A stretch of DNA of 34,767 nt from Hydrolagus affinis (taxonomy: Eukaryota): the NCBI GenBank assembly GCA_012026655.1, contig JAAILG010006085.1, forward strand, positions 1-34,767, given 5' to 3'. Each line of letters begins with the position of its first letter. The first letter of the stretch is position 1. The notes under the pieces are model-generated. The model made no database searches. It was not told where the DNA came from and saw only the letters and a list, made by a program, of their open reading frames with translations. The position numbers and the translations under genes are program-made. Positions 2,865 through 28,114 of this stretch are shown here, in pieces.

Positions 2865-3227
2865 CTTTGTAGCAAGTGTAACGATAAGTCTGGTTGCAGT
2901 CGCTGTTAAACCACAGACCGTTGTTCATAGCAACACAGATCACAGAAGACACATAGAAATTTGCCTCCTCTCTCCAGTGTGTGTAGTTGAATGTGTCTCC
3001 GTTTGTCCATGTCCACCCAACATTGGACTCATTATTATAGTACAGTCCAATCCAAAGAGGGATGTCAGGGGCAAACATCTGAGATATGAACCTGAGCTCC
3101 TCTGGATTCCGGACGCTGACAATATCAGTGTGATGATTGCGGCAGTAATCCCGAGCTTCAGTCCAGTTTTTCTGCTGGTTGATATGTATATATTCTCTGT
3201 CCTGGGGTTTTACAGGTTGAGACACAT
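2865..3227 (-). CDS. CTLD9 exon (363 nt, phase 1-1, EAN variant)
   Basis: ttttctttctcag| acceptor and AAAG|gtaaga donor. KNWTEARDYC...LWIGL...CVAMNNGLWFNSDCNQTYRYTC. Confidence 0.92.
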
Positions 3228-3506
3228 CTGAGAAAGAAAAACGATAACAATAATACTCGCATTTGACAAATCACTTCAAGATGTCTATAAGCATTTCATA
3301 GAATTAACTCTTAAGATCCTTGTCCTTCTATTCAAACTCCAAAACCCTCTTGACCATCTCTTACAATTTATACTCTATCCCATTCCCTGTCTGAATGCTC
3401 TGCACTTCTGGTTGACTTGTTCTGTCCATCTCATCAAGGAAACAATAATGAAAAACAACTTGTGTAGTTGAAAATTTCCCAAATGCTTGTAATTTACCGA
3501 TTTTAT

Positions 3507-3875
3507 CTTTGTAGCAAGTAAACTGGTACGTTTGATTGCAGTCATTATGAAGCCACAGAGCATTGATCACAGCCACACAGATTCTGGGGCTTGGATTATC
3601 TGGTTCCGGAAGTTTCCAATGGTCATTATTGAACTTGTCTCCATTTATCCACTTCCAGCCTGCATTAGGTTGCTTATTATCATGGTACAGTCCGATCCAG
3701 ACAGGTGCATCTCCTCTAAACAGCTCAGATATCCCCTCCTGCTCCTTTGGGTTGCTGATGCTGGCAAGGTCTGTATAGAAATTGCGGCAGTGATCGCGGG
3801 CGTCACTCCAGTTTTTCGTTTGGTTGACTCTGTGATATGTTCTGTCCTGTTGCTTTGTTCTCGGATCTAATGGAT
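3507..3875 (-). CDS. CTLD8 exon (369 nt, EPD variant); canonical donor mutated GT>AT, alternative phase-1 donor at 3498
   Basis: Open CTLD frame KNWSDARDHC...VWIGL...EPDN...CVAVINALWLHNDCNQTYQFTC. Ends AAAG|ataaaa, with ATCG|gtaaat 9 nt downstream. Confidence 0.82.
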
Positions 3876-4065
3876 CTAACAAGAGACCATCAAATCAGGA
3901 AATAGCCTAGAGATCAAATGGTTTCTATTTCTTGCAAAGGTTTTTTGGGGTGGGGGGGAAAGCAAAGACAGTTCATATATAGTTTCGCCCCCATAATACA
4001 CAGTCACCGTATACACTTTGCAGTTTATGTTGCAGAGTGAAACATTATATCAAATGCAAAGATTA

Positions 4066-4434
4066 CCGTAAATACCCGCGTATAAGGCGCACTCACGTAT
4101 AAGGTGCACCCCCCACTTTTGACCACCTCGTGGCGAAAAAAAATGATATTGCCAGTGGAATTTTTTTTCCCGCCGGAGATATCATCGGAAAAAAAATTTC
4201 CACCAAAAAAAAATCCAGCAGCGGTGCAGTAAGAATTACCGGACATCGAAGGTGAGTAGCGCCTGGTCTGCGTTGCCGATCCTGGAGAGCGGGTAGTCAT
4301 ACTGGCGGCGCAGTTTGATGACGTACCTCTGGGGGCTGGTCGTCTTTTCCTTGTATCTGCATATAAGGCGCACCCCCCTCTTTCGAGACTTTACGACACG
4401 AAAAAAAGTGCGCCTTATACCCGGAGATTTACGG
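4066..4434. mobile_element. Non-autonomous Tc1/mariner-superfamily (Tc2/pogo-like) MITE
   Basis: TA target duplication at 4064-65 and 4435-36. Imperfect TIRs CCGTAAAT.c.CG.GTATAAGGCGCAC at both ends. Repeated subterminal TATAAGGYGCAC motifs. Confidence 0.85.
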
Positions 4435-4730
4435 TACTATATTATAGCACAAATACCGTCATCAAATTGGAAACCTTATCAAAGAAACAATCAAGACAGT
4501 ATAATGTTCTCTTTGATAGAGCAAGTGTCACACATGTTTATTGAGTCTCACATATAAATAACTTAACAGAGTGAATATTTTGAGAGGAAATTTTCTGAAG
4601 GGTGTGGATGCATAGCAGGGAATTTGAACTAAGTGGCATTGCAATTGGCTTAATGGCTTGTACCTCTAACTGATATGATTTGAGAAAGGGAAGCAATCTT
4701 CTTGACAATCATCTCACTCCCTGATCTTAC

Positions 4731-5096
4731 CTTGGTAGCAACTGAACCTGTACGTTTGATTGCAGTTGTCATTAAACCACACACCACTGTTCATAGCAAC
4801 ACAAATCTCAGCACCTGGGTAGACATTCAGTTCATTATCTTTCCACTGTGTGTAACTGAGCTCATCTTCGTTTATCCATTTCCACCCAGTCGTGGTGCGG
4901 TTACTGTTGTAAAGGCCAATCCAGTAAGGTTTATCTCCATCAAACATCTTAGATACGATCTCCTGCTCCTCAGTGCTCCGAATGCTGATAAGATCCATGT
5001 AATGCCTGCGGCAGTAATCCCGCGCTTCAATCCACTTTTTACGTTGGTCTATCCAGTAATAATCCCTGTGTGCTGATTTTGTGGTTGGGAATAGAT
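4731..5096 (-). CDS. CTLD7 exon (366 nt, phase 1-1, ELN variant)
   Basis: cactcaccag| acceptor and CAAG|gtaaga donor. KKWIEARDYC...YWIGL...EICVAMNSGVWFNDNCNQTYRFSC. Confidence 0.92.
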
Positions 5097-5469
5097 CTGG
5101 TGAGTGCAAAGGCAGCAGAAAATTGGTACAAGCTCCAATGATATCCAGTTTGCAACTCCTTCAATCCTTAATCGCTGAATGTTATATTAAATTCTCAGGT
5201 TTTCATCCATACCTTGTCTTTATTCTTTCTACCTCACTTAATTCCCTCCCCCCCCCTCCCCCCCCACCCCACACACACAGAATACTCCTTAACATTCGAT
5301 CTCTTCAATGTTCTTCTAGTCCAAACCAATTTCCCATTACCTATGCAGATCCCTCCATTAAATCATTGACTGTGATTTCAGCTTCACTAAGGAAGTGGAT
5401 GTTGCTGATGGTGACACTTAGCAGGAGCAAGATGGTAGCCATTGGTGGACACTAGAAATAAGTTTTTAC

Positions 5470-5571
5470 CTGATAAATGATTGCTTTGAGAGTTCGGAGG
5501 TATCGTTGGTGTGGGCAGAGATATTTCTTTTGGAGGAAGCTTTGTGGGTTGTGGAGATGATTGCTTAAGAA
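5470..5571 (-). CDS. Pro/Ser/Thr-rich linker exon (102 nt): VLKQSSPQPTKLPPKEISLPTPTIPPNSQSNHLS
   Basis: tctggctttaacag| acceptor, TCAG|gtaaaa donor, open phase 1-1. Confidence 0.72.
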
Positions 5572-5934
5572 CTGTTAAAGCCAGAAACAGACATCATGCC
5601 ATTCACTATTGGACTGATATGTTGTTTCAATGATTGCAATGAACTGTAAAGATCTTATCATAATCATAATGACTCACAGTGTGTCTCAGTGGAGATATTG
5701 AAAGAAATTTTGGAACTGTTTTAGGCAAAGTTGGCAGATTTTGTTAAAAAGGTGATCATTGCATTGTAAAATAAGTTATCCCATAAGAAATTGGGTGCTT
5801 CACTGAAATGAAGTATATTATTCAGAGATTGTAGGGATTTGGAGGAAAGAGCAGTCAAATGGAATGAGAATGTATTGTTCCAATGCTAGATGCAACAGCA
5901 GAGCAAATATGACAAACTCACAGAAGTGAGAGAA

Positions 5935-6440
5935 GTAATAATAGTGCTTGCATTTTATATAGCACCTTATCACGTCTTCTAGACATCTCAAAGCTCTTCA
6001 CAGAATATACTGCAAAGTAGAATTGGCAGTATATTTTCGGACGAAATGCAGTAGCTTGTTGCACATGGCAGTGTCCCACAAACCATTAAATCAGTCATTG
6101 AGTGACTGATTTATCATTTTATTATCTTATTTTTGAAGGAATGATTACCTCGGGAAAAGCGATCCACTAATCAATTAACAACCAGGTTCTTACTTCCTGA
6201 TGGGTAAACCGAGGCATGTGGAGCAAGGAAATGTACCCAAAGTTTTGCCGTACTGGGACCTGAACCCAGGTCCTCTCCAATAACACAATAATAAAAATTG
6301 GTCATTTCAATCCATGACGGTTTGAGGGTACGTTGCTGTGCGCAATTGGCTGCTGCGTTGCACCCACAAATATACAGCCAATTCACTTTACAGTATATTC
6401 TGTGAAGCACTTTGAGACGTCGATCAGATGTGAAATTTGC
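5935..6440. mobile_element. Two partial copies of the same SINE in opposite orientations (5935-6130 minus, 6280-6440 plus)
   Basis: They share the core cacagaatatactg.aaag...cccacaaac with the 705-987 copy. Confidence 0.7.
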
Positions 6441-6800
6441 TTATGTGAAAGGTTTCGACAGGCTAGATAGGGAAAAGCTGTTTCCGCTGGTAGGTGTGTC
6501 TGTGACCCGTGGACACAGTCTTAAGATATCTACCAAAAGAAGCAGAGGGGAGGTTAGAAGAAATTTTTTTACTCAGCGAGTTGTTCGAATTTGGAATGAT
6601 CTGCCAGAAAGGATAGTGAGGTCCGATTCGATAGCAGCTTTTAAGAGAGAACTAGATAGGTATCTGGGGAAGATGGGTTTGCAGGGTTATGGGGAGAAAG
6701 CTGGTGATTGGAGTTAACAAAAGTGACTTGCTCGGTCAAAGAGCCGGCACAGACTCGATGGGCTGAATGACCTCCTTCTGTGCCGTAAAAGAAAAAAAAA
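6432..6800 (+). mobile_element. CR1 LINE 3' end
   Basis: KGFDRLDREKLFPL...TRGHSLKI...RRNFFTQRVVRIWNDLP, followed by the tail gatgggctgaatgacctcc. Confidence 0.85.
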
Positions 6801-6932: not shown

Positions 6933-7286
6933 CTTTGTGGCACATAAACCGGTATGTATGATTGCAGTAATCGTCGAACCACGTCTCGTTCCCTACAGCC
7001 ACACAGACCATAGCTTCTTGATAACCATTAGGCTCCTTCTCTTTCCAGTGTGTATAATTGAAGTTGTCTCCATTGATCCACTTCCAACCTATTTCAGAGT
7101 GGTTATTATTAAAGAGCCCGATCCACAAAGCAAAGTCTCTGTAAAACATCGAAGTGAAGATTTTCTGCTCCTCTGGGTTCCGAACGCTGACAAGATCTGT
7201 GTAATGTTTGCGGCAGTAATCCCGCGCATCAGACCAGCTTTTCCTCTGGTCGATAAGGTGATACCCTCTGTCTGCAGGATTAATTT
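6933..7286 (-). CDS. CTLD6 exon (354 nt, phase 1-1, EPN motif)
   Basis: ctctcaccag| acceptor and AAAG|gtaaga donor. KSWSDARDYC...LWIGL...EPNG...CVAVGNETWFDDYCNHTYRFMC. Confidence 0.92.
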
Positions 7287-8396: not shown

Positions 8397-8762
8397 CTTT
8401 GTAACAAGCGAACCTGTAAGTCTGATTGCAGTAGTTATCAAACCATAGACTATTGATCATAGCAGCACAGATCACAGATCCTGGTGGAGCATTTGGCTCC
8501 TTGTAGTTCCAGTGTGTGTAGATCAATTCATCACCGTTGATCCACTCCCATATGGTTGTAGTGTAGTTATTGTTGTACAGCCCAAGCCAGAGTGGTGTGT
8601 CTTTACTGAACAGTTGAGTAATATATATATTCTCCTCTGCGCTCCGAATGCTGACAATATCCGTGTAGTAAGTGGTACAGTAACTGCGGGCTTCAGCCCA
8701 TCTTTTCCTTGTTTCAATGCGGTAATACTCTCTTTTCAGGGCATTGATGGCTAGAGATGTAT
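8397..8762 (-). CDS. CTLD5 exon (366 nt, phase 1-1, EPN motif); absent from the supplied ORF track
   Basis: ctctcacaag| acceptor and AAAG|gtaaga donor. Hand translation is open: DTSLAINALKREYYRIETRKRWAEARSYCTTYYTDIVSIRSAEENIYITQLFSKDTPLWLGLYNNNYTTTIWEWINGDELIYTHWNYKEPNAPPGSVICAAMINSLWFDNYCNQTYRFACYK. Confidence 0.9.
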
Positions 8763-9150: not shown

Positions 9151-9693
9151 CCTGGTCATTGGTGATCAAATATTCAACCACTATCAATCAATCAGCAAAA
9201 ATCCCCTCACTTCCTTTCTCCACGCCTTCAAATCTTTCTTCAAACTATCTGTTGTCATTATTTTGGGCAACACCATCAAAACTTTCCTTTTTGCCCTTTA
9301 TCATACCTGCAAACTGTTTTGAGATATTTATTCTCCATGAAAAGGGATTACACAAGTCACAACTGTTGATGGGAATAACCAAGACCCAATAAGGGTTCGA
9401 TTGAACTGAGATTCTAATCAATGAGCAACCACTTATATTTTGTAATTCTGTCGGCCTGTTGACCCACCTGTACAGAAAATATAGTGACCGAGAAGCAGTG
9501 ACCAAAAGAGAGAATTAAATTAAAGATATAAACATAAAAGAAAGAGAAAACCTAGAAGAAATGCTAAAAGAAGAAACAAAATAGTATTTGATAGCATCAT
9601 AATGAAATTCATGCACCAAATAGCTTCCACCTGCAGTGTGACTCCAGGAATGCAGGTCCACATCACATTACACATCACCCTCACTGAACTTAT

Positions 9694-10021
9694 CTCTGTA
9701 ACAACTAAAGCTTTGGTAAGTTTGATGACAGTAATCATCAAATACATAGACCATTGCTCATAGCATCAAAGACCAAGGCTCCTGAGTCCATTTTGTCTCC
9801 TCCGCTTTGCTGTTTGCACATTCAGACTGCTCTCCAATTATCTACTTGCACTTGGCTATTGTGGAGCTGTAATTTTCTACAACCCAGAGAGGAGTATCTT
9901 TGTCAGATAACTGATATCTGAGAATATGATCCTCTGAGCTCCTAACACTAATAAGATCTATACTTCAGCCCAGTTGTTTCTTAGATTAATCCTGTGATAG
10001 TCACTGCTTGTGGATTCAGTT
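9694..10021 (-). pseudogene. Decayed CTLD exon
   Basis: Recognisable fragments (DYHRINLRNNWAE, DLISVRSSED, TPLWV, AMSNG, FDDYCHQTYQSFSCYR) in shifting frames, with stops, a deletion and a donor mutated to AT. Confidence 0.8.
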
Positions 10022-10318
10022 CTCGTCATTCACATTGCAATTGTAACCAGCATATAAAACATGTCTCTTATTGCTGCACCAAATCCTCCGTTATTTCAGT
10101 GTTTTGATATACAAGTGTAATTTATGTTGAATATTGAATTCAAGGTGACAACTGCTGCTATTATCAACAGGAATGAAACAAGAAAGTGTGTTTATTTGTG
10201 GAAATATCTACCAAAATTAATAACAACACTCCTATAATACTTTAACTGCATGGACCTTCTTTCATCCAAACCAACCTTGGAACATTGTGAACTTGTTCCT
10301 AATAGAGAAACTTGTTAC

Positions 10319-10432
10319 CTGCTGCAGTATTATTTTGAGAGATGGGAGAGTTCAAAGTTGAAATTGGAGTTGTTTCTGTGGCAAAAATGATTGGGGTTTG
10401 TGGAGACGGGGAAGTCAATGGAACTCGAAGGT
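10319..10432 (-). CDS. Mucin-like repeat exon, copy a (114 nt, in-frame 3-nt deletion): DLRVPLTSPSPQTPIIFATETTPISTLNSPISQNNTAA
   Basis: ttccttctgtatacag| acceptor, GCAG|gtaaca donor, open frame. Confidence 0.75.
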
Positions 10433-10964
10433 CTGTATACAGAAGGAACGTCATACATTGTTATTGACATGGCAACTGAAATTGCTATACATCAAATATT
10501 AAGCTTATATAGCCCACTCATATCATACTCGCATTGAGGTGAGCAACAAGACCTTGGCAGAAATGCTCTTAATCTTGATTTTCAAACCTCTGCAAGTAGC
10601 TTTAATCACTCTGGTAATCCAAAGTTCCCATAACTTCCTTCCGTTCCTGGTTGGACGAAACCTTGGGCAAGTTGCCTTACTCCACATGGTTATGATCACT
10701 CAAAAACAATAATAAAGTTGTCTTTTCAATCTATGACTCTATATCATTGCTGCGAGCAATTGGCTTTTGCATTTCACTGACAAATATACAGACAATTTAC
10801 TTTACAGGATATTTTGTGAAGTGCTTTGAGATGTCTAGAAGATGCAAAATTAAATACAAGTATTATTATTATTATATTCATTGATGCCACTGCTCAAACA
10901 AAATAATCCAATGCCATGTTGCATTGCATTTGTTTCTCTTTCACCACCTTTAAAACCATTTTAT

Positions 10965-11352: not shown

Positions 11353-11484
11353 CTTCTTCAGAATTGATTTTGGAGATGAGAAGATCCAAGGACGTGTTTC
11401 TTGGTGTTTCTTCTGTTGAAAAAACGATTGTATACTGTGGCCATATCAGTGATCGTTTACTCGAAGTCGAAGATTTCTGAATAT
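11353..11484 (-). CDS. Divergent linker exon (132 nt): DIQKSSTSSKRSLIWPQYTIVFSTEETPRNTSLDLLISKINSEE
   Basis: ctttctgtgactgcag| acceptor, GAAG|gtacaa donor, open phase 1-1. PQ.xIVFxTExTP resembles the 117-nt repeat exon. Confidence 0.62.
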
Positions 11485-11756: not shown

Positions 11757-11856
11757 NNNNNNNNNNNNNNNNNNNNNNNNNNNNNNNNNNNNNNNNNNNN
11801 NNNNNNNNNNNNNNNNNNNNNNNNNNNNNNNNNNNNNNNNNNNNNNNNNNNNNNNN
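11757..11856. other. Assembly gap (100 N)
   Basis: Run of exactly 100 N with SINE-derived sequence on both sides. True length unknown. Confidence 0.99.
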
Positions 11857-12150
11857 ATCTTATCAACGTCCCAAAGCGCTTCACAGAATATACTGTAAAG
11901 TGAATTGACTGTATATATTTGTGGGCGAATTGCGGCAGCCAATTGCGCACAGCAGTGTCCCACACACAGTCGTGGATTGAAATGACCAATTTTATTATTG
12001 TGTTTTTTTGGAGGGATTATTATTAGGTGTGTGGAGTAAGGAACTTGCCCAAGGTTTCGCCCTGACCTGCCTGGATTCGAACACAGGTCTCCCCAGCTTG
12101 GTCTCCCCAGCTTTCAAGACAAGTGCTCTAACCACTGAGCCACAGGACTA
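11857..12150 (-). mobile_element. tRNA-derived SINE copy abutting the gap
   Basis: Same body and tRNA-like head (ggattcgaacac...ccactgagccac) as 705-987. Confidence 0.78.
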
Positions 12151-12441: not shown

Positions 12442-12807
12442 CTTTGTAACACAAGAAGATATATGTTTGATTGCAGTAATGATCAACCCACTGGCCATTG
12501 CTCATAGCAACACAGCCTAGGGTCGTGAGGTAATCATTTGGCTCCATAAATTTCCAGTTTGTATAATTGACCTTGTATTCATTTGTCCACATCCAATGTT
12601 GATTGGATCCATTAAGATTGTACATCCCAATCCAGAGAGGCGTAGCTCCATCAATCAGCTCAGATATAAACTTGTTTTCTTCTGGGTCCTGAATACTGAT
12701 AAGATCTTTGTAATGACTGCGGCAGAAATCCAGAGCTTCAGTCCAGTTTTTCTTTTGGTCGATTAGGTAATATTCTCTATCCTTTTGTTTATTCATCGAA
12801 GATTCAT
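12442..12807 (-). CDS. CTLD4 exon (366 nt, phase 1-1, EPN motif)
   Basis: gatcatcag| acceptor and AAAG|gtaaaa donor. KNWTEALDFC...LWIGM...EPND...CVAMSNGQWVDHYCNQTYIFLC. Confidence 0.92.
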
Positions 12808-13197
12808 CTGATGATCAAGCACATTTATTCAGGGTGAATTACCATCAAATCTTGTACAGTCTTACCACTCCCTATAGATAAAATCTTTACCTGCATTAAT
12901 CTCTACCATTAGGTATATCTTAAAATATTACCGGCTGAATAGTATATTTTACATGCATCTTGCAATCAGAAATTAGTGAAAACTGATATGCAAGTGTAAT
13001 TTAAGTTGAATATTGAATTCAAGGTGACCTCTGCTGCTATTATCAACAGGAATGAAAGAACAAAGTGGGTTTATTTGTGGAAATACCTACCAAAAATAAT
13101 AACAACACTCCTACAATATTTTTACTGCATGCGCCTTCTTTCATCTAAACCAACCTTGGAATATTGTGAACTTGTTCCTAATAGAGCAACTTGTTAC

Positions 13198-13314
13198 CTG
13201 CTGCAGTATTATTTTGAGAGATGGGAGAGTTCAAAGTTGAAATTGGAGTTGTTTCTGTTGCAAAAACGATTGGGGTTTGTGGAGACGGGGATGGAGTCAG
13301 TGACACTTGAAGGT
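13198..13314 (-). CDS. Mucin-like repeat exon, copy b (117 nt): DLQVSLTPSPSPQTPIVFATETTPISTLNSPISQNNTAA
   Basis: ttccttctgtatccag| acceptor, GCAG|gtaaca donor, open frame. Confidence 0.75.
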
Positions 13315-14179: not shown

Positions 14180-14340
14180 CAAGTTGGTCATTTCAAACCA
14201 CGACTGTTTGTGGGACGCTGCTGTGTACAATTGGCTGCCACATTTTGCCCACAAATAGTCAATTCACTTTACAGTGTATTCTGTGCAGCACTTTGAAATG
14301 TCGATAAGACGTGAAAAGCGCTACATTAAATGTGAGGATT
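14180..14340 (+). mobile_element. SINE 3' part
   Basis: aattggctgccacattttgcccacaaatagtcaattcactttacagt matches the SINE core. Confidence 0.7.
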
Positions 14341-14507: not shown

Positions 14508-14624
14508 CTGCTTCAGTATTATTTTGAGAGATGGGAGAGTTCATAGTTGAATTTGGAGTTGCTTCTGTTGCAAAAATGATTGGGGTTTGTGGAGACGGGG
14601 ATGGAGTCGATGGCACTCGAAGGT
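14508..14624 (-). pseudogene. Mucin-like repeat exon, copy c (117 nt), frame open but donor mutated GT>TT
   Basis: Ends GAAGCAG|ttaaca where the paralogs have GCAG|gtaa. Confidence 0.65.
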
Positions 14625-15122
14625 CTGGATACAGAAGGAAAGTCATACATTGTTATTGATATGGCATTGAAATTGCTATACATCAAATATTAAGCTTTTA
14701 TAGTCCACCCATACACGCTTTGAGGCGAGCAATAAGACCTTGTCAGAAATGGTGTTGATCTTGATTACCAGCCCCATGCAAGTAACTTTAATCACTCTTG
14801 TTACTCAAATTTCCCATAACTTTTTCTTTATGTTCCTAGTTTGGAAAAACCTTGGGCAAGTTTCCTTACTTTGCATGGTAATGATCGCTCAAAAACAATA
14901 ATAAAGTTGTCTTTTCAATCCATGACTGTTTGTCATTGCTGCGAGCAACTGGCTTCTGCAGTTCACTGACAAATATGCAGACAATTCACTTGATGGCATA
15001 CTCTGTGAAGTGCTTTGAGATGTCTACAAGATGCAAAAGAGTTATATCAAATGCAAGTATTATTCTTATTATATTCTTTGATGCCATATTGTGAACTTGT
15101 TCCTAATAGAGGAACATGTTAC

Positions 15123-15239
15123 CTGCTGCAGTATTATTTTGAAAGATGGGAGAGTTCATAGTTGAAATTTGAGTTATTTCTGCTGCAAAAATAATTTGGG
15201 TTGGTGAAGACGGTGATGGAGTCAATGGCACTTGAAGAT
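15123..15239 (-). CDS. Mucin-like repeat exon, copy d (117 nt): DLQVPLTPSPSSPTQIIFAAEITQISTMNSPIFQNNTAA
   Basis: ttttgcatccag| acceptor, GCAG|gtaaca donor, open frame. Confidence 0.72.
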
Positions 15240-18486: not shown

Positions 18487-18603
18487 CTGCTGCAGTATTA
18501 TTTTGAGAGATGGGAGAGTTCATAGTTGAAATTGGAGTTGTTTCTGTTGCAAAAATGATTTGGCTTTGTGAAGACTGTGATGGAGTCAATGGCACTTGAA
18601 GGT
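18487..18603 (-). CDS. Mucin-like repeat exon, copy e (117 nt): DLQVPLTPSQSSQSQIIFATETTPISTMNSPISQNNTAA
   Basis: Intact acceptor, GCAG|gtaata donor, open frame. Confidence 0.75.
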
Positions 18604-19228: not shown

Positions 19229-19345
19229 CTGCAGCAGTATTATTTTGAGAGATGGAAGAGTTCCTAGTTGAAATTGGAATTGTTTCTGTTGCAAAAATGA
19301 TTTGGGTTTGTGGAGACGGCGATGGAGTCAATGGCACTTGAAGGT
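19229..19345 (-). CDS. Mucin-like repeat exon, copy f (117 nt): DLQVPLTPSPSPQTQIIFATETIPISTRNSSISQNNTAA
   Basis: ttccttctgtatccag| acceptor, GCAG|gtaaca donor, open phase 1-1. One of six paralogous copies. Confidence 0.75.
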
Positions 19346-21030: not shown

Positions 21031-21736
21031 AAAACCTTGGGCAAGTTTCCTTACTCCACATGGTAATGATCGCTCAAAAACAATAATAAAGCAATCTTTT
21101 CAATCCATGACCGTATGTTATTGCTGCGATCGACCGGCTTCTGCAGTTCACTGACAAATATGCAGACAATTCACTTGACCACATACTCTGTGAAGTACGT
21201 TGAGATGTCTAGAAGGCGTGAAAGAGTTATATTGAATGCAAGTATTTTTATTATTAATAACACAAAATATCCAGAGCATTGTTGCATTGTATGTGTGTCT
21301 CTTTTACCACCTTTGAAACCATCATGGAAACCCTGAGACAGGTTACCAAGAAGTGTGATTGATGGCAAGTCATTTAAGAAAAAAACAGATTGATTCTATA
21401 ACGCTAAGATGGTAGATTGAGATTCTTGAGGCATGAGCTCAGATAGACAGTGTATTTTATCAGCTTTATGCAATCAATCAATATTCCTCAATGAAAAGTG
21501 CTACAAACGTGAAAGTTCTGGGCAATCAACAACAACATTATATTTATAGAGCACCGTTCACATCGGAAGGACGTCACAAAGCGCTGAAAATCAACTTTGG
21601 TTGACCTCTTGGGTAAATGCTGCTATTGTCAACATTGAAGAGAATCCCAGAATTATGTTTTAGATAAGTAAAGTGAAAATAACTCAGTATTTTACAATGC
21701 GAGACAGCGAAACGCAAGATCACAATCAGTAATTAC

Positions 21737-22102
21737 CTTTCTGGCAAATGAATTGATACGTTTGATTGCAGAAATCATCAAACCACAGCGCTTTGGTTAC
21801 AGCCACACAAACTGGAGAACTTAGATAACCTTTCGGCTCCAGAAATTTCCAGTGTGCATAACTAAATTGTTCTCCTGTTGTCCACATCCAGTTGGTTTTA
21901 GAGCCCTTTTTATTGTACAGCCCAATCCAGACAGGTACATGTTTTTCAAACTGTGGAAAAACGAGCTGGTTCTCCTCAAAGCTCTGAATGCTCATCAAAT
22001 TTGTATAGTGGATGCGGCAAAACATCAGGGCTTCAGTCCAGTTTTTCTCTTGATCAATCAGATAATACATCCTGTTCAATGACTTATTCTTCACTCCAGG
22101 AG
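21737..22102 (-). CDS. CTLD3 exon (366 nt, phase 1-1, EPK variant)
   Basis: ttctcattag| acceptor and AAAG|gtaatt donor. KNWTEALMFC...VWIGL...LEPKG...CVAVTKALWFDDFCNQTYQFIC. Confidence 0.92.
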
Positions 22103-22480: not shown

Positions 22481-22552
22481 CTGTTACAAAATCGGTGGTG
22501 GATTTTGAAGGCTTGACTGTTGGTTTGCTGGGAATTGCAGATATCTGAAAGT
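22481..22552 (-). CDS. Linker exon (72 nt): DFQISAIPSKPTVKPSKSTTDFVT
   Basis: tgtttccacag| acceptor, ACAG|gtaaag donor, phase 1-1, S/T/P-rich. Confidence 0.75.
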
Positions 22553-22723: not shown

Positions 22724-22828
22724 CTGTTGCCAAATTGGTGCTATTTAGAGTTATGCCTGGAGTTGTTTTTGGAGTAAAGGCTGATGGTTCTGCAGATAGC
22801 TGGTTGGTTGGTAAAGATTTCTTCCCAC
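22724..22828 (-). CDS. Linker exon (105 nt): GGKKSLPTNQLSAEPSAFTPKTTPGITLNSTNLAT
   Basis: tctccacag| acceptor, ACAG|gtgaga donor, phase 1-1, S/T/P-rich. Confidence 0.75.
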
Positions 22829-23189: not shown

Positions 23190-24655
23190 TATAACAACAA
23201 CAACAACTTTGATTTATATAGCGCCCTCCAACCGGATGGTGTCTCAGAGCGCTTCACAGTAGCAGATCCCGGGACCGAGCCAGGGGCAGGAAGGTAACCA
23301 AAAACTCGGTCAAAGAGAAAGGTCTTCAACTGTGACCTGAAACTGGGAAGAGAGGGGGCGAGGCGAAGCGAGTGAGGAAGGGAGTTCCAGAGCCTCGGGG
23401 CATAGTAGCTAAAGACACAGCCACCGAGGGTGGAGCGGAGGACTCGGGGGACATGGAGGAGGCCAGACCCAGAGGAGCGAAGGCAGTGGGTGCTGGGTTG
23501 GGGGGAGAGGAGATCAGAGAGATAGGAGGGTGCAGAGGAGTGGAGGGATTTGAATACAAGGGTGAGGATCTTGAAGTCGATCCTCTCTGGGACAGGGAGC
23601 CAGTGAAGTCTGGCAAGGACTGGGGTAATGGGGGAGTGAAGCTTAGAGCGGTGAGCATGCGGGCGGCAGAGTTTTGGATAAGCTGGATTTTGTGGATTGT
23701 GGTGGAGGGGAGACCAGCGAGGAGGGCGTTGCAATAGTCCAGCCATGAGGTGACAAAGGCATGGACCAAGGTTTCAGCGGCTTTTAAGGTGAGGTATTGC
23801 CAGAGATGGGCGATCCATCAGAGGTGGTAGAAGGCAGTGCCGGTGATGGACCGGATGTGGGGGAGGAAGGACAGTTGGGGGTCGAACTTGATGCGAAGGT
23901 TGCGCACAGGTTCGGAGAGTTTTACGGGCAGGCCGGGAAGGTGGAGGAGGTGAGAGCCATGCGAATGGAGACGTTGACGAGAGCCAAGGAGTATGGCCTC
24001 TGTCTTGTCAACATTCAGCTGCAAGAAATTTGTGCTCATCCAGCCCCTGATGTCTGAAAGACAGGCTGACAGAACATTGGGGGACTGGGGGTCACAAAGT
24101 GGAGAGATAGAGGTGGGTGTCATCCGTGTACATGTGGAAGTGTGCCCCATGTCTGCAGATCACATCCCCAAGAGAAAGTGTATAGATGAGGAAAAGGAGG
24201 TGGCCAAGGATGGATCCCTGGGGTACCCCGCAGGTAACTGGGTGACTGCAGGAGGAAAAACCGTTTATGGAGATGTACTGCTGGCGGTTTGTGAGGTAGG
24301 ACTCGAACCAGGCGAGTGCGGTCCCACTGAGGTGGATGGCAGAGGACAGGCAGTGGAGGAGGATGGCGTGGTCGACTGTGTCAAAGGCAGCCAACAGGTC
24401 CAGGAGGATAAGGAGGCAGAGAAAGCCCTGGTCACAGATAGAGAGGACATCGTTTGTGACTTTCACAAGCGCAGTCTCTGTACTGTGGGCAGGGCGGAAA
24501 CCGGACTGGAGGGGTTCGAAGAGGGAGTGGGAGGAGAGGTGGGCGTGGAGTTGGTTTGCAACAACGCGTTCCAGTGCTTTTGAGAGGAAGGACAGGTTTG
24601 AGATAGGGTGGTAGTGGCTGGAGTTTGAGGGATCTAGGGAGGGTTTTTTTCTCAA
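23190..24655 (-). mobile_element. L2 LINE 3' fragment
   Basis: QSGFRPAHSTETALVKVTND...LLDLLAAFDTVDH...GVPQGSILG...HMYTDDT. The (aac)n tail is at about 23195. Confidence 0.92.
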
Positions 24656-24879
24656 AATTAAATTAAAGGAAGCAGGAAACAAAGAAAGAGAGTTAATGAG
24701 AGACAGAATGAAAGAGAGAGATAGAGCTTGTGAAAGAGAAAGACAGAGAGAGAGACCAAATGAACAAACAAACAACAACACAACCAAATTACATTTATAG
24801 AGTGCCTTTCATGTCGGGAGGTTGTCCCAAGATGCTGAAACAAATGAACAAATGAATTGAAAGAAAGGAAGACAAAACG

Positions 24880-25325
24880 GGAAAGATAAAAATAACTTCT
24901 ATACAAGCATCCAGTTCAGCAAACATGGATTGTATTCCTATAAATTTAGAAGGTGATTCGATTGGCTTGTTTAAGGTGATAAAAGATTGTGTGGTAACAG
25001 AGAAGCTATTTCCTGTGGTGGGGATCCAAAACAAGGGGTTAGAATCTTAAAGTTAAAACCAGGCGATTTAAGAGTGAAATTAGGAAGCATTTTTTTCACT
25101 CAAAATGTGGTAGAAATTTGGAACCCTCTCTCCAAAGGCTGTGGACGCTGGATCCATTCCATTCACACCTTCAAATGTGTAGTTAATAGATTTTTGGCAG
25201 GTTACCATATTAAGGGATATGGAGAAAAAGTGGAAACTTGGATATGACATGATTATTTGAGGTACAGATCAGCCACTATCTAATTAATTGGCGGAACAGG
25301 CTTGAAGGGCTGAATGGGTATTCCC
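24880..25325 (+). mobile_element. CR1 LINE 3' end
   Basis: SIFFTQNVVEIWNPL and the tail gaagggctgaatgg. Confidence 0.75.
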
Positions 25326-25626
25326 ATTACTATACTCTTACACTTCTCTGTTCCTAACCATCAGAATTGTTTACTTTCGATTTCTCTTCTTGGGGTTTCA
25401 ATTGCAAAGGAATTTTTGCAGATAAGCCTCCTGAAATTATGATTGAAGCATTCAACAACAACAAAGTACAACAAAATTACATTTATAGAGCGCCTTTCAC
25501 GTCGGGAGGACATCCCAAGGCCCTGAATTCAGCTCGATTGGAAGAGTTGGCAGCGGGATAGGCAGACTGTCCTCCTGTTCCATAATTGAACATGACTCTT
25601 GGGAGGGTCCATATGGCTACACTTAC

Positions 25627-25992
25627 CTGTGTAGCACATGAACTCGTATGTCTTATTGCAGTAGTCATCGAACCACAGGCCATTGTTCACAGCCACACAG
25701 ACATCAGACGTAAGGTAGTCATTTGGCTCCATATGTTTCCAGTGTGTGTAGTTGACCTCCTCTCCATTTGTCCACATCCACGCAACAGTGGAACCGTTTT
25801 TACTGAACAGCCCGATCCAGAGAGTACGATCTCCGACAATCAGCTGAGATATGCGCTTGGCATCCTGTGTACTCTGGATACTGACCAGATCCGTGTATTG
25901 ATCTCGGCAGTAATCCCAGGCTTCAGTCCAGTTTTTCAGTTGCTCGATTGGGTAATATACTCTGCCCACAAGTTTATTCCTCGAAGCCCAAA
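25627..25992 (-). CDS. CTLD2 exon (366 nt, phase 1-1, EPN motif)
   Basis: tcttcactag| acceptor and ACAG|gtaagt donor. KNWTEAWDYC...LWIGL...EPND...CVAVNNGLWFDDYCNKTYEFMC. Confidence 0.92.
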
Positions 25993-26399
25993 CTAGTGAA
26001 GAAACATCACAGCAGTGACCATTTGTAGATCCAAATTTCATTACAATAACAACAAAATTACATTTATAGAGAGCTTTTCAGGTGTTAAACACTGAAAATA
26101 CATTACCTTGACATCCCTTTGTATTGGTACTTCGTCCTACCTCAGTAAACTCTAAACAGAAAACTCTGTTTTCCTACAAAAGTCTTTATGTAATTTATTC
26201 CTTTTTTTTTGTCCCATCATTGCTCACCAGACTTTCAGCCACCATTTCCAAATTCTGTGGAAGTATTGTATTTCCAAATCTCAGCCTTGCTGCCATCACT
26301 TTCACCCCTACCCGCTTTTGAAAGATGTCTCTCTTAGCACCACTTCTGTTATTGTTGGTCTCATCAGCAGCCTTAAATATTTTAGCTAAAGTGCTACAC

Positions 26400-26745
26400 A
26401 ACAACCAACAACAAAAATTATAATTGTATAGTGCCTTTCACATCAGGAGGGAGTCCCAAGGCACTGGACAGTCAGTGTTTCAGACACGAACTGAGGTCAG
26501 AATTGGGGAAGATGGCACAGTCAGAGGTGGGTCTTGAGACGGGACTTGAAGGAGGCCAGAGAGGGGATGAGGTGGAGGGATTGTGGGATGGAATTCCAAA
26601 GGTTGGGAGCACAGTGGCTGAAGGCTCGCCCGCTGATAATGGGACGGGTGGGTCTGGGGCATGGAATAGCCCGGATCCTACTGAGAAAGTGGACAGGTTG
26701 GTAGGGGTTAGGAGGTTCTAGAGGTAGGGTGGGGTTTAAAGGTGA
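26400..26745 (-). mobile_element. L2 LINE 3' end
   Basis: Homologous to the other L2 3' ends, with an (aac)n tail. Confidence 0.75.
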
Positions 26746-26956
26746 GACAAGTCAAGTGCGTGCATTGAACTCCAGATCTCCATTTGGGGACTGGCATCAA
26801 CGGAAAGAAGTAACAGATGGCAAATTATTTGTCAAAAACTAAGTTACATCACTATGTTGCCCCAGAATCAAAATTATTGCATATCAGTGAATAAACATAT
26901 GGGCAGAAATATGTAAATTTCTGAGGAAATAGTTGCAAAGCGAGGTTATTTCAAAC

Positions 26957-27046
26957 CTGTAGGTTGAGGTTTTTCTGATACAGCAAGTTTTGTGGGCTCT
27001 GAGGACTTGATTTCTGGTTTGATGGTGGTCGCAGCATTTTCAAAAT
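26957..27046 (-). CDS. Ser/Thr/Pro-rich linker exon (90 nt): DFENAATTIKPEIKSSEPTKLAVSEKPQPT
   Basis: ctttcacag| acceptor, ACAG|gtttga donor, open phase 1-1 frame, linker-like composition. Confidence 0.7.
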
Positions 27047-27287
27047 CTGTGAAAGTGGAATGAGCAAAACAATTACAAAACAAATAATAAAATTAATAAT
27101 CTTTGCATTTGATATAGTGCCCCATTATGACATTGAGATGAGTCAAAGTGCTTCGCACTGTAATGTACTGTTAGATTTTCTGGGTAAAACCCGGCTCCCA
27201 ATTGCACACAGAAGTATCTTGACAAACAGTCATGAATGACTAATTGGTACGCTTGGAAAGCAATCCACCAATTGACTAACTCTTTAC

Positions 27288-27653
27288 CTTCATAACAGAT
27301 GAACCAATAAGTTTGATTGCAGTACTCATCAAGCCACAGCCCATTGTGCAAAGCCACACAGATCTCAGAAGCTGGATAACCATTCATCTTTTTATCTTTC
27401 CAGTTAGTATAATTGAATGTGTCTTCATTGGTCCATTCCCATCCATCAGTGGTTAGATTATTGTTGTACAACCCAATCCAATAGGATTCTCCATCATTAA
27501 TCATCTGAGCAGTGATATTAGTTTCCTCTGGGCTCCGGATGCTGACCAGATCCACATAATGAGTCCGGCAGTGATCCAGGGCTTCAAACCATTTCTTCTT
27601 TTCGTTAATTGCGTGGTACTTTCTGTCCAAGGATAGAACAGTTTGGGGCAGAG
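27288..27653 (-). CDS. C-type lectin domain exon CTLD1 (366 nt, phase 1-1)
   Basis: Acceptor ttgcag| and donor GAAG|gtaaag. Translation KKWFEALDHC...YWIGL...EICVALHNGLWLDEYCNQTYWFICYE shows the 4-Cys CTLD pattern. Confidence 0.92.
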
Positions 27654-27759
27654 CTGCAAAGATGCAATTGCAACAATAACAAAGATTGCATTACATAGCA
27701 CTCCTCATGTGGGTTAGTGCCCCAGCACACTTGGCAATATAAGAATACTAATCCTTACA

Positions 27760-28047
27760 TTTGATATAGCGCTTTTCATGTCTTCTAGATGTCTTAAAGT
27801 GCTTCGCAAAATATACTGTAAAGTGAATTGACTACATATTTGTGGGCGAAACGTGGCAGCCAATTCGGCAGAGCAGCGTCCCACAGACAGATTCGAGTGA
27901 CCAATTTATAATTGCCTTTTGTTTTCGAGAGATTATTATTAGGCATGTGGAGTAAGGAAACTTGCCCAAGATTTTGCTTTTCCAAGAATCAAACTCGGGT
28001 CACTCGCTGGTAAGGTGAGTGCTCTAAATACTGAGCTACAGGACTCC
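27760..28047 (-). mobile_element. Near full-length tRNA-derived SINE in intron 1 of the lectin gene
   Basis: Same core as 705-987. The head ends about 20 nt from the leader-exon donor. Confidence 0.78.
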
Positions 28048-28068
28048 AGATGATAAAAATAGACTCAC

Positions 28069-28114
28069 CTTGAGTAAGAAGGAAGAGGGAGAAGAGAACC
28101 AGCATTTTACTCAT
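28069..28114 (-). CDS. Exon 1 (signal peptide) of multi-CTLD lectin gene: MSKMLVLFSLFLLTQ, phase-1 donor
   Basis: ATG at 28114 (second in-frame ATG at 28105), hydrophobic run, donor CAAG|gtgagt. Splices in frame to the CTLD1 exon, giving MSKMLVLFSLFLLTQALPQTVLS-LDRKYH. Confidence 0.8.

What the first reader, a model, noticed from the sequence alone, without database searches (positions are those of the whole stretch)
2865..28114. Lectin gene built entirely from interchangeable phase 1-1 cassette exons (9 CTLDs plus at least 11 mucin-like linkers behind one leader)
Seen in sequence: one signal-peptide exon, then nine diverged CTLD exons and at least 11 S/T/P-rich linker exons. Each starts and ends in phase 1 and has a length divisible by 3 (354-369 nt; 72-132 nt). 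Any subset can be spliced to the leader without a frameshift. Established knowledge: symmetric phase 1-1 exons underlie exon shuffling, and the mannose-receptor family (MRC1, MRC2, PLA2R1, LY75) has an N-terminal ricin plus FN2 region before its CTLDs. No such region lies between this leader and CTLD1, so this is not a canonical mannose receptor. Inference: either one protein of about 1,500 aa with lectin beads on an O-glycosylated string, or a combinatorially spliced innate recognition repertoire.
Basis: partly seen in the sequence, partly recalled or inferred. Interest (0 to 1): 0.82.

Follow-up and report, generated by a model that had tools for sequence, protein, structure and literature searches.

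The report
Chimaera multi-lectin gene of cassette exons
This is a real gene of a cartilaginous fish, probably for a secreted protein, that strings at least nine C-type lectin domains and several serine/threonine/proline-rich spacers from exons sharing one reading phase; it belongs to a fish-wide family that is annotated automatically but unstudied, and nothing yet shows it is spliced combinatorially.

Summary
The observation largely holds, on the minus strand. One signal-peptide exon (28114-28069) is followed by nine intact Lectin_C exons of 354-378 nt. All start and end in phase 1.

Ten spacer exons rich in S/T/P are credible by sequence. Two (L3, L8) have clear orthologues inside Callorhinchus milii mRNA models. 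Five are intact members of a recently amplified 117-nt family (four of 117 nt, one of 114 nt) derived from L8. Three (L1, L2, L10) are predictions only. An eleventh (4356-4240) is doubtful.

New here:
- a decayed tenth CTLD pseudo-exon;
- a dead 117-nt copy (donor GT changed to TT);
- a mutated donor at CTLD8;
- the N gap is intronic, inside a SINE;
- the gene runs off the window, since C. milii models carry three more CTLDs and a tail absent here.

The window holds no ricin or FN2 domain. In a tree the CTLDs fall outside the mannose-receptor family and inside a clade of fish proteins that go from leader straight to CTLDs. Seven of the nine pair one-to-one with C. milii CTLDs. None has a complete calcium/sugar site.

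Catshark RefSeq isoforms of homologues skip single CTLD cassettes, so limited exon skipping is plausible. A combinatorial repertoire is unsupported, and I obtained no RNA reads.

Verdict: new member of a known, uncharacterised kind.

The parts
28069..28114 (-). Leader (signal-peptide) exon, coding part: MSKMLVLFSLFLLTQ plus 1 base. Phase-1 donor AAG|gtgagt.
   Evidence: Aligns with the leaders of C. milii models P0185 and P0187. The junction LLxQ|ALPQTV is the same as in XP_007910097.
27288..27653 (-). CTLD1 exon, 366 nt, phase 1-1.
   Evidence: Pfam Lectin_C E 2e-17. Splice sites. 75% aa identity to C. milii P0008 domain 1. Sister pair in the tree, support 99.
26957..27046 (-). L1, candidate spacer exon, 90 nt, phase 1-1 (DFENAATTIKPEIKSSEPTKLAVSEKPQPT). 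Unverified.
   Evidence: unique sequence. Not present in C. milii model P0185, which joins CTLD1|CTLD2 directly. No significant similarity.
25627..25992 (-). CTLD2 exon, 366 nt, phase 1-1. Carries the EPN motif.
   Evidence: The acceptor matches the C. milii junctions CYD|VWGSRNK and LLTQ|VWPSRNK.
22724..22828 (-). L2, candidate spacer exon, 105 nt (or 66 nt with an inner acceptor), phase 1-1. Unverified.
   Evidence: No significant match in C. milii models.
22481..22552 (-). L3, spacer exon, 72 nt, phase 1-1 (DFQISAIPSKPTVKPSKSTTDFVT).
   Evidence: Orthologous exon DFQISTTPSKPSAKPPKSINDF lies in model P0187, directly after a CTLD2-like domain. Score 79 against a shuffle maximum of 45.
21737..22102 (-). 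CTLD3 exon, 366 nt, phase 1-1.
19229..19345 (-). L4, copy of the 117-nt spacer exon family, intact.
   Evidence: The family is significantly similar to the L8-type exon of P0187.
18487..18603 (-). L5, copy of the 117-nt spacer exon family, intact.
15123..15239 (-). L6, copy of the 117-nt spacer exon family, intact.
14508..14624 (-). Dead copy of the 117-nt exon. The frame is open but the donor is G|tt instead of G|gt.
13198..13314 (-). L7, copy of the 117-nt spacer exon family, intact.
12442..12807 (-). CTLD4 exon, 366 nt, phase 1-1. Carries the EPN motif.
   Evidence: Pfam E 3e-21. 74.6% identity over 122 aa to P0187. The acceptor matches the junction CQK|DEPSMNK.
11757..11856 (.). Assembly gap (N x 100), intronic, inside a tRNA-Ser-derived SINE copy.
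11353..11484 (-). L8, spacer exon, 132 nt, phase 1-1 (DIQKSST...ISKINSEE).
   Evidence: 61% identity over the whole 44 aa to the exon that follows the CTLD4-like domain in P0187. tblastn E 1.3e-7, flush with the predicted boundaries. Score 107 against a shuffle maximum of 55.
10319..10432 (-). L9, 114-nt member of the 117-nt family, intact.
9692..10040 (-). Decayed CTLD pseudo-exon. Remnants DYHRINLRNNW.., ..DLISVRSSED..TPLW.., ..FDDYCHQTYQSFSCYR lie in different frames with stops. The donor position reads AT.
   Evidence: hmmsearch fragments, reading of the sequence, coordinates.
8397..8762 (-). CTLD5 exon, 366 nt (354 with acceptor 8750), phase 1-1. Carries the EPN motif.
   Evidence: 85% identity to C. 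milii P0010. Tree support 100.
6933..7286 (-). CTLD6 exon, 354 nt, phase 1-1. Carries the EPN motif. Joined directly to CTLD5.
   Evidence: The junction CYK|EISPPDRGYH in C. milii XP_007910317 matches acceptor 7286.
5470..5571 (-). L10, candidate spacer exon, 102 nt, phase 1-1. Unverified.
   Evidence: No significant match.
4731..5096 (-). CTLD7 exon, 366 nt, phase 1-1.
4240..4356 (-). Doubtful eleventh 'linker'. Arginine-rich, weak acceptor (8 of 15 pyrimidines), donor CCG|gtaatt.
   Evidence: No similarity to any model (p about 0.97).
3498..3875 (-). CTLD8 exon, 378 nt (369 with acceptor 3866). The canonical donor is mutated (AAAG|at). The next GT, 12 nt downstream (TCG|gtaaat), keeps phase 1.
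   Evidence: C. milii P0047 reads CYKGKIGK at this place, which I take to mean GT at the usual donor position; no C. milii DNA was read.
2865..3227 (-). CTLD9 exon, 363 nt. It ends in an open phase-1 donor AAG|gtaaga, so the gene continues below 2865 and probably off the window.
   Evidence: No further CTLD, tail or terminal exon was found in 1-2864.

Best explanation
The stretch holds the 5' end and main body of one gene on the minus strand. It most likely comes from a holocephalan (chimaera) other than Callorhinchus milii.

The gene encodes a large, heavily glycosylated, probably secreted 'beads-on-a-string' protein. A cleavable signal peptide is followed directly by at least nine short-form C-type lectin-like domains, each on its own phase 1-1 exon. 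Short spacers rich in S/T/P, likely O-glycosylated, lie between some of them on their own phase 1-1 exons.

The gene belongs to a fish-wide family of multi-CTLD proteins that go from leader straight to CTLDs (CLEC20A-like; auto-annotated as 'MRC1-like' or 'MRC2-like'). This family is separate from the mannose-receptor family.

Because every exon is symmetric, cassettes can be duplicated (the 117-nt spacer family), lost (the CTLD pseudo-exon, the dead 117-nt copy) or skipped without breaking the frame. The array evolves, and probably splices, by whole modules.

No domain keeps the full calcium/sugar ligand set. Binding is therefore more likely multivalent and non-canonical (protein, or glycan through another surface) than classical mannose-type recognition.

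Shown: the exon anatomy, domain identity, orthology, the clade, and the absence of MR hallmarks. Inferred: secretion, glycosylation, inclusion of most spacers, and ligand type.
For: - Nine Lectin_C exons and one leader, all phase 1-1, give an open 1,473-codon model.
- There is a single good leader exon on the strand.
- C. milii models reproduce the junctions leader|CTLD1, CTLD1|CTLD2, spacer|CTLD3, CTLD3|CTLD4, CTLD4|L8, CTLD2|L3 and CTLD5|CTLD6.
- Orthologue identity is 69-85%, against 43-59% among the nine domains of the window. Seven one-to-one sister pairs have support 98-100. The domains are old and individually conserved.
- The tree separates MR-family CTLDs (support 94) from a clade of teleost, elasmobranch and holocephalan multi-CTLD proteins that go from leader straight to CTLDs.
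- No ricin, FN2 or MR tail is present in the window.
- Heptranchias perlo homologues have 369-nt phase 1-1 CTLD exons and small spacer exons.
- Shark homologues start with signal peptide then CTLD and end right after the last CTLD. C. milii P0188 ends in a Lys-rich tail with no hydrophobic stretch that I could see by eye; no membrane-span predictor was run.
- There are 38 N-glycosylation sequons, and the spacers are 36-50% S/T/P.
- Aligned with sugar-binding MRC1 CTLD4, no domain has WND. EPN occurs only in CTLD2, 4, 5 and 6. The Glu before the Cys occurs only in CTLD1 and 7.
Against: - There is no transcript evidence from this species.
- L1, L2, L10 and the 117-nt copies have no counterpart at the same positions in the C. 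milii models, which join CTLD1|CTLD2 and CTLD3|CTLD4 directly. They may be skipped, lineage-specific or not exons.
- Substitutions among the 117-nt copies are mostly non-synonymous, so their sequence is not under visible constraint.
- The 3' end is outside the window, so a transmembrane anchor cannot be excluded for this gene.
- The C. milii models are fragmentary automatic predictions, and I cannot see what RNA support they had.
- CTLD8's donor is mutated, so that cassette may be dying.
Confidence: 0.7

Rival explanations
1. Combinatorial repertoire. The symmetric cassettes are spliced in many combinations, in the manner of Dscam, so that one gene yields a diversified set of multivalent recognition proteins.
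For: All exons are phase 1-1 and every junction codon starts with G, so any subset is in frame. RefSeq isoforms of the catshark homologues differ by exactly one 118-aa CTLD, or by a CTLD plus spacer, in two species. C. milii models differ in which spacers they include, and one joins the leader directly to a CTLD2-like domain.
Against: Symmetric 1-1 exons are the norm for extracellular modules and do not by themselves imply regulated choice. The isoforms seen in sharks are a handful of single-cassette skips. The C. milii model with leader|CTLD2 belongs to a paralogous gene and may simply lack CTLD1. Each CTLD is individually conserved between species, as expected for a fixed array. No RNA data exist for this locus. 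No mutually exclusive exon clusters or docking-type elements were looked for or seen.
Confidence: 0.07
2. A membrane-bound endocytic receptor of the mannose-receptor type. Its transmembrane and cytoplasmic exons (and possibly other domains) lie outside the window, and it has secondarily lost the ricin and FN2 domains.
For: The summed best matches among solved structures are LY75, PLA2R1, the yolk-sac IgY receptor, MRC1 and MRC2. The domain count (at least 9, probably at least 12) is MR-like. The 3' end of the gene is not in the window.
Against: The CTLDs fall outside MR-family CTLDs in the tree. Homologues in sharks and the C. milii 3' model P0188 end without a hydrophobic anchor that I could see by eye. 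These are short-form CTLDs on single exons joined by mucin-like spacers, unlike MR family members. No ricin or FN2 is present.
Confidence: 0.1
3. A decaying or partly pseudogenised array. The locus is a relic in which cassettes are being lost, and the full product is not made.
For: There is one decayed CTLD pseudo-exon, one dead 117-nt exon and a mutated canonical donor at CTLD8. Introns are full of LINE and SINE insertions. No RNA run holds the locus.
Against: All nine CTLD exons are open and keep the four cysteines, the WIGL motif and the tryptophans. They keep good splice sites and are 69-85% identical to C. milii orthologues. The leader and its perfect donor are intact. The lack of RNA runs probably reflects the lack of served RNA data for this species.
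Confidence: 0.08

Closest known systems
Callorhinchus milii gene models XP_007910097 (P0185), XP_007910316 (P0188), XP_007910317 (P0166), and MetaClust/UniProt fragments P0187, P0008, P0010, P0047
   Same: One-to-one orthologous CTLDs lie in the same order at 69-85% aa identity. They share the same leader, the same exon junctions and orthologous spacer exons L3 and L8.
   Different: C. milii has two paralogous genes of this type, and its models are fragmentary. They join CTLD1|CTLD2 and CTLD3|CTLD4 directly, without L1 or the 117-nt exons. They show three further CTLDs and a Lys-rich tail that are not in this window.
[quoted passage not shown]
   Same: A signal peptide is followed directly by 4-7 CTLDs, separated by short spacers that begin D/E plus a hydrophobic residue. 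There is no ricin or FN2, and no anchor that I could see by eye. CTLD exons are single, phase 1-1, about 369 nt. RefSeq isoforms skip whole CTLD cassettes.
   Different: Their CTLDs form a separate clade (support 92), so the arrays expanded independently in elasmobranchs and holocephalans. The spacers are not similar in sequence and are less rich in S/T/P.
Mannose-receptor family (MRC1, MRC2/Endo180, LY75/DEC-205, PLA2R1; CTLD group VI)
   Same: Many tandem CTLDs lie in one chain. This family gives the best summed sequence matches among solved structures. Most domains lack a working sugar site, as in that family (my knowledge).
   Different: There is no ricin B domain and no FN2 domain. The CTLDs fall outside MR CTLDs in the tree. 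These are short-form CTLDs lacking the extra N-terminal cysteine pair seen in MRC1 CTLD4. Mucin-like spacer exons are present. There is no evidence of a transmembrane tail.
Teleost and other fish CLEC20A-like tandem-CTLD proteins (for example Triplophysa 'LY75-like' with 12 CTLDs; carp 2-3 CTLD proteins that cluster with human CLEC20A, PMC6400144)
   Same: The build is leader plus CTLDs only. They sit in the same large clade opposite MR CTLDs. NCBI names some family members 'putative CLEC20A'.
   Different: They share only about 30% identity and have hardly any spacers. The teleost arrays are built from alternating pairs of two CTLD types. Human CLEC20A itself was not compared here.

Membership tests
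C-type lectin-like domain superfamily (Pfam PF00059) | Significant match to the Lectin_C profile over the whole domain | tested here: met
   All nine exons score E 1.4e-14 to 3e-21 and cover profile positions 1-2 to 106-107 of 107.
C-type lectin-like domain superfamily (Pfam PF00059) | Four conserved cysteines and the WIGL core motif | tested here: met
   C28, C98, C111, C119, W58 and G60 are invariant in all nine.
Calcium-dependent carbohydrate-binding C-type lectins (functional class) | Complete calcium site 2 ligand set: EPN or QPD, Glu before the third Cys, and WND | tested here: not met
   Aligned with MRC1 CTLD4, WND is W-[F/L/V]-[D/N/H] in all nine. EPN occurs in CTLD2, 4, 5 and 6 only. 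The Glu occurs in CTLD1 and 7 only. No domain has all three.
Mannose-receptor family (CTLD group VI) | N-terminal cysteine-rich ricin B-type domain | tested here: not met
   The leader is followed by a 415-nt intron and then CTLD1. tblastn with four MR-family N-termini finds nothing better than E 0.3 anywhere in the window.
Mannose-receptor family (CTLD group VI) | Fibronectin type II domain before the CTLDs | tested here: not met
   Same search, no hit. The C. milii orthologue model also goes from leader straight to CTLD1.
Mannose-receptor family (CTLD group VI) | 8-10 tandem CTLDs | tested here: met
   Nine intact CTLDs plus one pseudo-exon lie in the window, and probably more lie downstream.
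Mannose-receptor family (CTLD group VI) | Single transmembrane segment and a cytoplasmic tail with endocytosis motifs | not testable with these tools
   The 3' end of the gene lies outside the window. MR C-termini find nothing. The C. milii 3' model ends in a Lys-rich tail with no hydrophobic stretch seen by eye.
Mannose-receptor family (CTLD group VI) | CTLDs group with MR-family CTLDs in a phylogeny | tested here: not met
   The 28 MRC1 and LY75 CTLDs lie on one side of a branch (SH-aLRT 94). All window CTLDs lie on the other side. The domains are short, so resolution is limited. MRC2 and PLA2R1 were not included.
Fish multi-CTLD proteins with leader straight to CTLDs (CLEC20A-like; auto-annotated MRC1-like or MRC2-like) | Signal peptide followed directly by tandem short-form CTLDs with no other domain type | tested here: met
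   The same holds in P0156, P0002, P0185 and P0001.
Fish multi-CTLD proteins with leader straight to CTLDs (CLEC20A-like; auto-annotated MRC1-like or MRC2-like) | Each CTLD on one phase 1-1 exon of about 354-378 nt, with small phase 1-1 spacer exons | tested here: met
   Window. Heptranchias perlo locus L001: 369-nt exons...caag|GT and ACAG|gtaat. Catshark isoform differences are whole CTLDs.
Fish multi-CTLD proteins with leader straight to CTLDs (CLEC20A-like; auto-annotated MRC1-like or MRC2-like) | CTLDs group with those of the family in a phylogeny | tested here: met
   A 50-row clade (support 94) holds the teleost, elasmobranch, C. milii and window CTLDs.
Fish multi-CTLD proteins with leader straight to CTLDs (CLEC20A-like; auto-annotated MRC1-like or MRC2-like) | Relationship to human CLEC20A itself | not tested
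   This rests only on NCBI names of some hits and on a carp study that clustered such CTLDs with human CLEC20A (PMC6400144).

The most novel reading that the evidence does not exclude
The leader can be joined to many different subsets of at least 9 CTLD and about 10 spacer cassettes. One germline gene, lying next to a T-cell-receptor V segment, would then supply a splicing-diversified family of multivalent recognition proteins in a cartilaginous fish. The recent amplification of the 117-nt spacer exon would tune reach and valency.
Probability: 0.07. Interest if true: 0.8.

Novelty: new member of a known kind. Interest (0 to 1): 0.38.

Why it matters
This gives a clean, fully mapped example of a vertebrate gene made almost wholly of symmetric phase 1-1 modules and caught in the act of module turnover. 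One spacer exon has been amplified to six copies. One of those copies and one lectin cassette are dead, and one lectin cassette has a damaged donor.

It also draws attention to a fish-wide family of multi-CTLD proteins that go from leader straight to CTLDs. Genome pipelines label this family 'mannose receptor-like', yet it is phylogenetically and architecturally distinct from the mannose-receptor family, and nobody has studied what it does. In the tree the arrays of holocephalans and elasmobranchs form separate clades, so they appear to have expanded independently.

If the spacers are O-glycosylated and the protein is secreted, it is a candidate mucosal or plasma agglutinin of cartilaginous fish.

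Practical lesson: the 'MRC1-like' and 'MRC2-like' names in fish annotations should not be read as orthology.

Tried and rejected
- RNA evidence. Two run searches found no served RNA run holding a twentieth of the words. They found only a run of unknown kind holding 43-50% of mostly intronic words (probably DNA), single-cell polyA runs added by study, and a relative's RNA contigs.
No junction reads could be examined.
- A word-indexed protein search with CTLD4 alone found no candidate in its length range.
- I tried to fetch C. milii genomic DNA of the orthologous locus, to compare exon and intron conservation. P0166, P0117, P0047 and P0099 are not on record. P0207 is an unrelated scaffold. The S. 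canicula gene is too long, at 147 kb.
- Literature searches found no description of this chondrichthyan family. The only related material was the Fugu CTLD survey (PMC514892) and a carp study mentioning CLEC20A-like clustering (PMC6400144).
- Rejected candidates: 23492-23337 is a multi-copy transposon piece. 4356-4240 is doubtful. A weak second 'leader' at 13144-13087 has a donor match of 6/9 and is no better than plus-strand background.
- Rejected idea: an exon hidden at the N gap that disrupts the frame. The gap is intronic, inside a SINE.
- The phase-class control showed that my spacer-exon scan is only weakly specific. I do not rest the spacer claim on it.

Full report
WHAT IS THERE

The gene lies on the minus strand. 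A stop-to-stop scan gives nine open segments with CTLD hallmarks. All nine hit Pfam Lectin_C over the full profile, at E 1.4e-14 to 3e-21.

Each domain is bounded by a pyrimidine-rich AG acceptor one base into a codon and by a ...AAG|gtaag-type donor one base into a codon. The exons are:

| Exon | Coordinates | Length (nt) |
|---|---|---|
| C1 | 27653-27288 | 366 |
| C2 | 25992-25627 | 366 |
| C3 | 22102-21737 | 366 |
| C4 | 12807-12442 | 366 |
| C5 | 8762-8397 | 366 |
| C6 | 7286-6933 | 354 |
| C7 | 5096-4731 | 366 |
| C8 | 3875-3498 | 378 |
| C9 | 3227-2865 | 363 |

The leader exon reads ATGAGTAAAATGCTGGTTCTCTTCTCCCTCTTCCTTCTTACTCAAG|gtgagt (28114-28069). It encodes MSKMLVLFSLFLLTQ plus one base. 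It is the only convincing signal-peptide exon with a phase-1 donor on that strand.

Splicing all predicted exons gives 4,420 nt, or 1,473 codons, with no stop, and the model ends open in phase 1. Every donor ends in G, so junction codons are G-N-N and can never be stops.

THE SPACER EXONS

A scan for AG...GT phase 1-1 open pieces with at least 36% S/T/P finds 11 distinct donors on the minus strand and 1 on the plus strand. The specificity is modest. Other phase classes on the minus strand also give 2-8 candidates each.

Sorting the candidates:
- 23492-23337 is a multi-copy transposon piece.
- L1 (27046-26957), L2 (22828-22724), L3 (22552-22481) and L10 (5571-5470) are unique sequence.
- L8 (11484-11353, 132 nt) is related to a family of six copies of about 117 nt: 19345-19229, 18603-18487, 15239-15123, 14624-14508, 13314-13198 and 10432-10319.
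- One of those copies, 14624-14508, has G|tt where the others have G|gt and is dead.
- The copies are about 90% identical, and most codon differences are non-synonymous. This fits a composition-selected mucin-like spacer or neutral drift.
- The candidate at 4356-4240 is Arg-rich, has weak signals and resembles nothing.

Four spacer types begin D-[F/L/I]-[Q/E], as do spacers that follow CY[K/T] in the shark homologues.

COMPARATIVE SUPPORT

A full HMMER search with C4 finds thousands of CTLD proteins. The nearest are cartilaginous-fish proteins.

Callorhinchus milii fragments map onto the window in the same order:

| C. milii protein | Window domains | aa identity |
|---|---|---|
| P0008 | C1-C2-C3 | 75, 75, 69% |
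| P0010 | C5-C6-C7 | 85, 73, 71% |
| P0047 | C8 | 73% |
| P0187 | C4 | 74.6% |

The nine window domains are only 43-59% identical to each other.

XP_007910097 (P0185) reads leader|ALPQTV...(C1)|VWGSRNK...(C2)|41-aa spacer|...(C3).

P0187 comes from MetaClust without an organism name. It shares a run of about 65 identical residues with C. milii UniProt P0064, so I treat it as a C. milii paralogue. It reads leader|C2-like|DFQISTTPSKPSAKPPKSINDFAK|...|C3-like|DEPSMNK...(C4-like)|DIQISSTP...ISKINSEE|....

Its two spacers are orthologues of L3 and L8.
- L3 scores 79 against a shuffle maximum of 45.
- L8 is 61% identical over all 44 residues, at tblastn E 1.3e-7, flush with my exon boundaries.
- The 117-nt family is significantly similar to the L8-type exon.

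XP_007910317 (P0166) confirms the direct C5|C6 junction.

L1, L2 and L10, and the placement of 117-nt exons between C3 and C4, have no counterpart in these models.

These are automatic models, and I could not see their RNA support. The conservation of the length, frame and sequence of L3 and L8 between species is itself evidence that they are exons.

THE GAP

The 100 N at 11757-11856 sit in the intron between C4 (donor at 12442) and L8 (acceptor at 11484). The upstream flank is one copy of a dispersed repeat found about ten times in the window. ARAGORN reads its head as a tRNA-Ser-like sequence at 12061-12150.

No coding piece abuts the gap in any frame. P0187 joins C4 directly to the L8 orthologue. 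The frames of C4 and L8 are each fixed by their own splice sites, so the gap does not bear on reading-frame continuity. A hidden extra cassette cannot be excluded.

NEW ANATOMY

A profile of the nine domains picks up two short CTLD fragments at 9964-9845 and 9757-9671. Reading the region shows a decayed tenth CTLD between L9 and C5. DYHRINLRNNW, IDLISVRSSED...TPLW and FDDYCHQTYQSFSCYR lie in different frames with stops, and the donor position reads AT.

C8's usual donor position also reads AAAG|at. The next GT, 12 nt on, keeps phase 1.

The array therefore shows gain (117-nt exons) and loss (pseudo-CTLD, dead spacer, damaged C8 donor) of whole modules inside an otherwise intact gene.

THE GENE IS NOT COMPLETE IN THE WINDOW

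C9 ends in an open donor. Nothing CTLD-like, and nothing like the C. milii tail, lies in 1-2864.

C. milii P0047, P0164 and P0188 carry CTLDs that are only 41-61% identical to any of the nine, so they are not orthologues of any of them. P0188 continues from a C8-like domain through three more CTLDs and one spacer to a Lys-rich C-terminus. I saw no hydrophobic segment in it by eye; no membrane-span predictor was run.

The true gene probably has twelve or more CTLDs.

WHAT FAMILY

tblastn with the N-termini (ricin plus FN2) and C-termini of four mannose-receptor-family proteins finds nothing in the window.

I built an IQ-TREE tree of 78 CTLDs. It included the window, C. milii, S. canicula, H. 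perlo, L. erinacea, a 12-CTLD teleost 'LY75-like' protein, frog and teleost MRC1, and rodent LY75. The results:
- All MRC1 and LY75 CTLDs lie on one side of a branch (SH-aLRT 94).
- All CTLDs of proteins that go from leader straight to CTLDs lie on the other side.
- Within these, holocephalan and elasmobranch domains form separate clades (92 each).
- C1, C2, C3, C5, C6, C7 and C8 each pair with one C. milii domain (98-100).

The domains are short and many forks are unresolved. MRC2, PLA2R1 and human CLEC20A were not in the tree.

The Heptranchias locus shows the same 369-nt phase 1-1 CTLD exons and small spacer exons.

A search with P0008 shows the family in sharks, rays, sturgeons, paddlefish, bichirs, bowfin, coelacanth, lungfish and teleosts. 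The names given include 'MRC1-like', 'MRC2-like', 'PLA2R-like', 'LY75-like' and 'putative CLEC20A'.

A carp study noted that such 2-3-CTLD proteins cluster with human CLEC20A (PMC6400144). The Fugu CTLD survey listed extra group VI-like fragments (PMC514892). I found no paper describing the chondrichthyan genes.

HOW IT PROBABLY WORKS

Homologues begin with signal peptide then CTLD and end right after the last CTLD. The C. milii tail showed no anchor by eye. I therefore infer a secreted protein.

There are 38 N-glycan sequons, several of them conserved in every domain (NWT, NYT, CNQT). The spacers are 36-50% S/T/P. This points to a heavily N- and O-glycosylated rod carrying many CTLDs.

Aligned with sugar-binding MRC1 CTLD4, none of the nine keeps WND. 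Only four keep EPN, and those four lack the Glu before the cysteine. Classical calcium-dependent monosaccharide binding is therefore unlikely, and the ligands are unknown.

Each domain is conserved across species far better than the domains resemble each other. This argues that each position has its own role, which fits a fixed array better than an interchangeable set.

ALTERNATIVE SPLICING

The only evidence is indirect. S. canicula isoform X2 lacks exactly one 118-aa CTLD of X1. X4 lacks another CTLD plus its spacer. S. torazame X3 and X4 show the same two skips.

To my knowledge NCBI's pipeline calls isoforms from transcript alignments, but I did not verify that for these records.

This makes single-cassette skipping plausible for the family. 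It is what symmetric exons allow in many genes, and it is far from a combinatorial repertoire.

No RNA of this species could be examined.

VERDICT

'Not a canonical mannose receptor' is right. 'Combinatorial repertoire' is untested speculation.

The gene is a new member of an already annotated but uncharacterised fish family. It has some instructive exon-turnover features.

Noticed in passing
window 31953-32287 (+): An intact V-set immunoglobulin-type segment (Pfam V-set E 1.6e-11; ...WYQQ...YYCAAR). It is followed by a recombination signal: heptamer CACAGTG at 32249-32255, a 23-nt spacer, and nonamer ACATAAACC at 32279-32287. It lies head-to-head with the lectin gene, about 3.8 kb from its leader. 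It looks like a T-cell-receptor V gene.
   Followed up: partly
window 9692-10040 (-): A decayed tenth CTLD cassette lies between spacer L9 and CTLD5, with frameshifts, stops and AT at the donor position. The gene tolerates loss of a whole module.
   Followed up: yes
window 14508-14624 (-): A sixth copy of the 117-nt spacer exon has an open frame, but its donor is G|tt instead of G|gt.
   Followed up: yes
window 3498-3512 (-): CTLD8's canonical donor reads AAAG|at. C. milii P0047 reads CYKGKIGK here, which I take to mean GT at this position. An in-phase GT 12 nt downstream could rescue the exon by adding four codons (DKI plus G).
   Followed up: partly
window 11857-12150 (-), with copies near 758-900, 5975-6083, 6279-6429, 10653-10843, 14181-14309, 14847-15032, 21032-21208, 27796-27977 and 30112-30251: A dispersed SINE whose head ARAGORN reads as tRNA-Ser(UGA)-like. 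About ten copies lie in the window, several inside the repeat unit that carries the 117-nt exon. The assembly gap interrupts one copy.
   Followed up: partly
window 24092-24787 (-), 15323-17031 (+): LINE reverse-transcriptase fragments lie in the large introns (RVT_1 E 3e-22 at 24092-24787; weak at 15323-15928).
   Followed up: partly
window 13087-13144 (-): A weak second leader-like open piece (MKEGACSKNIVGVLLLFLV, phase-1 donor, 6/9 consensus) lies just upstream of CTLD4. It is probably chance, since similar pieces occur on the plus strand.
   Followed up: partly
L001 (Heptranchias perlo, CM068675.1), 4549-34524: The shark homologue is a tandem array of near-identical units of about 7.5 kb. 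Each unit has a 369-nt CTLD exon with identical flanks, so the amplification is very recent or homogenised. A second multi-CTLD gene (811 aa) starts 9 kb downstream.
   Followed up: partly
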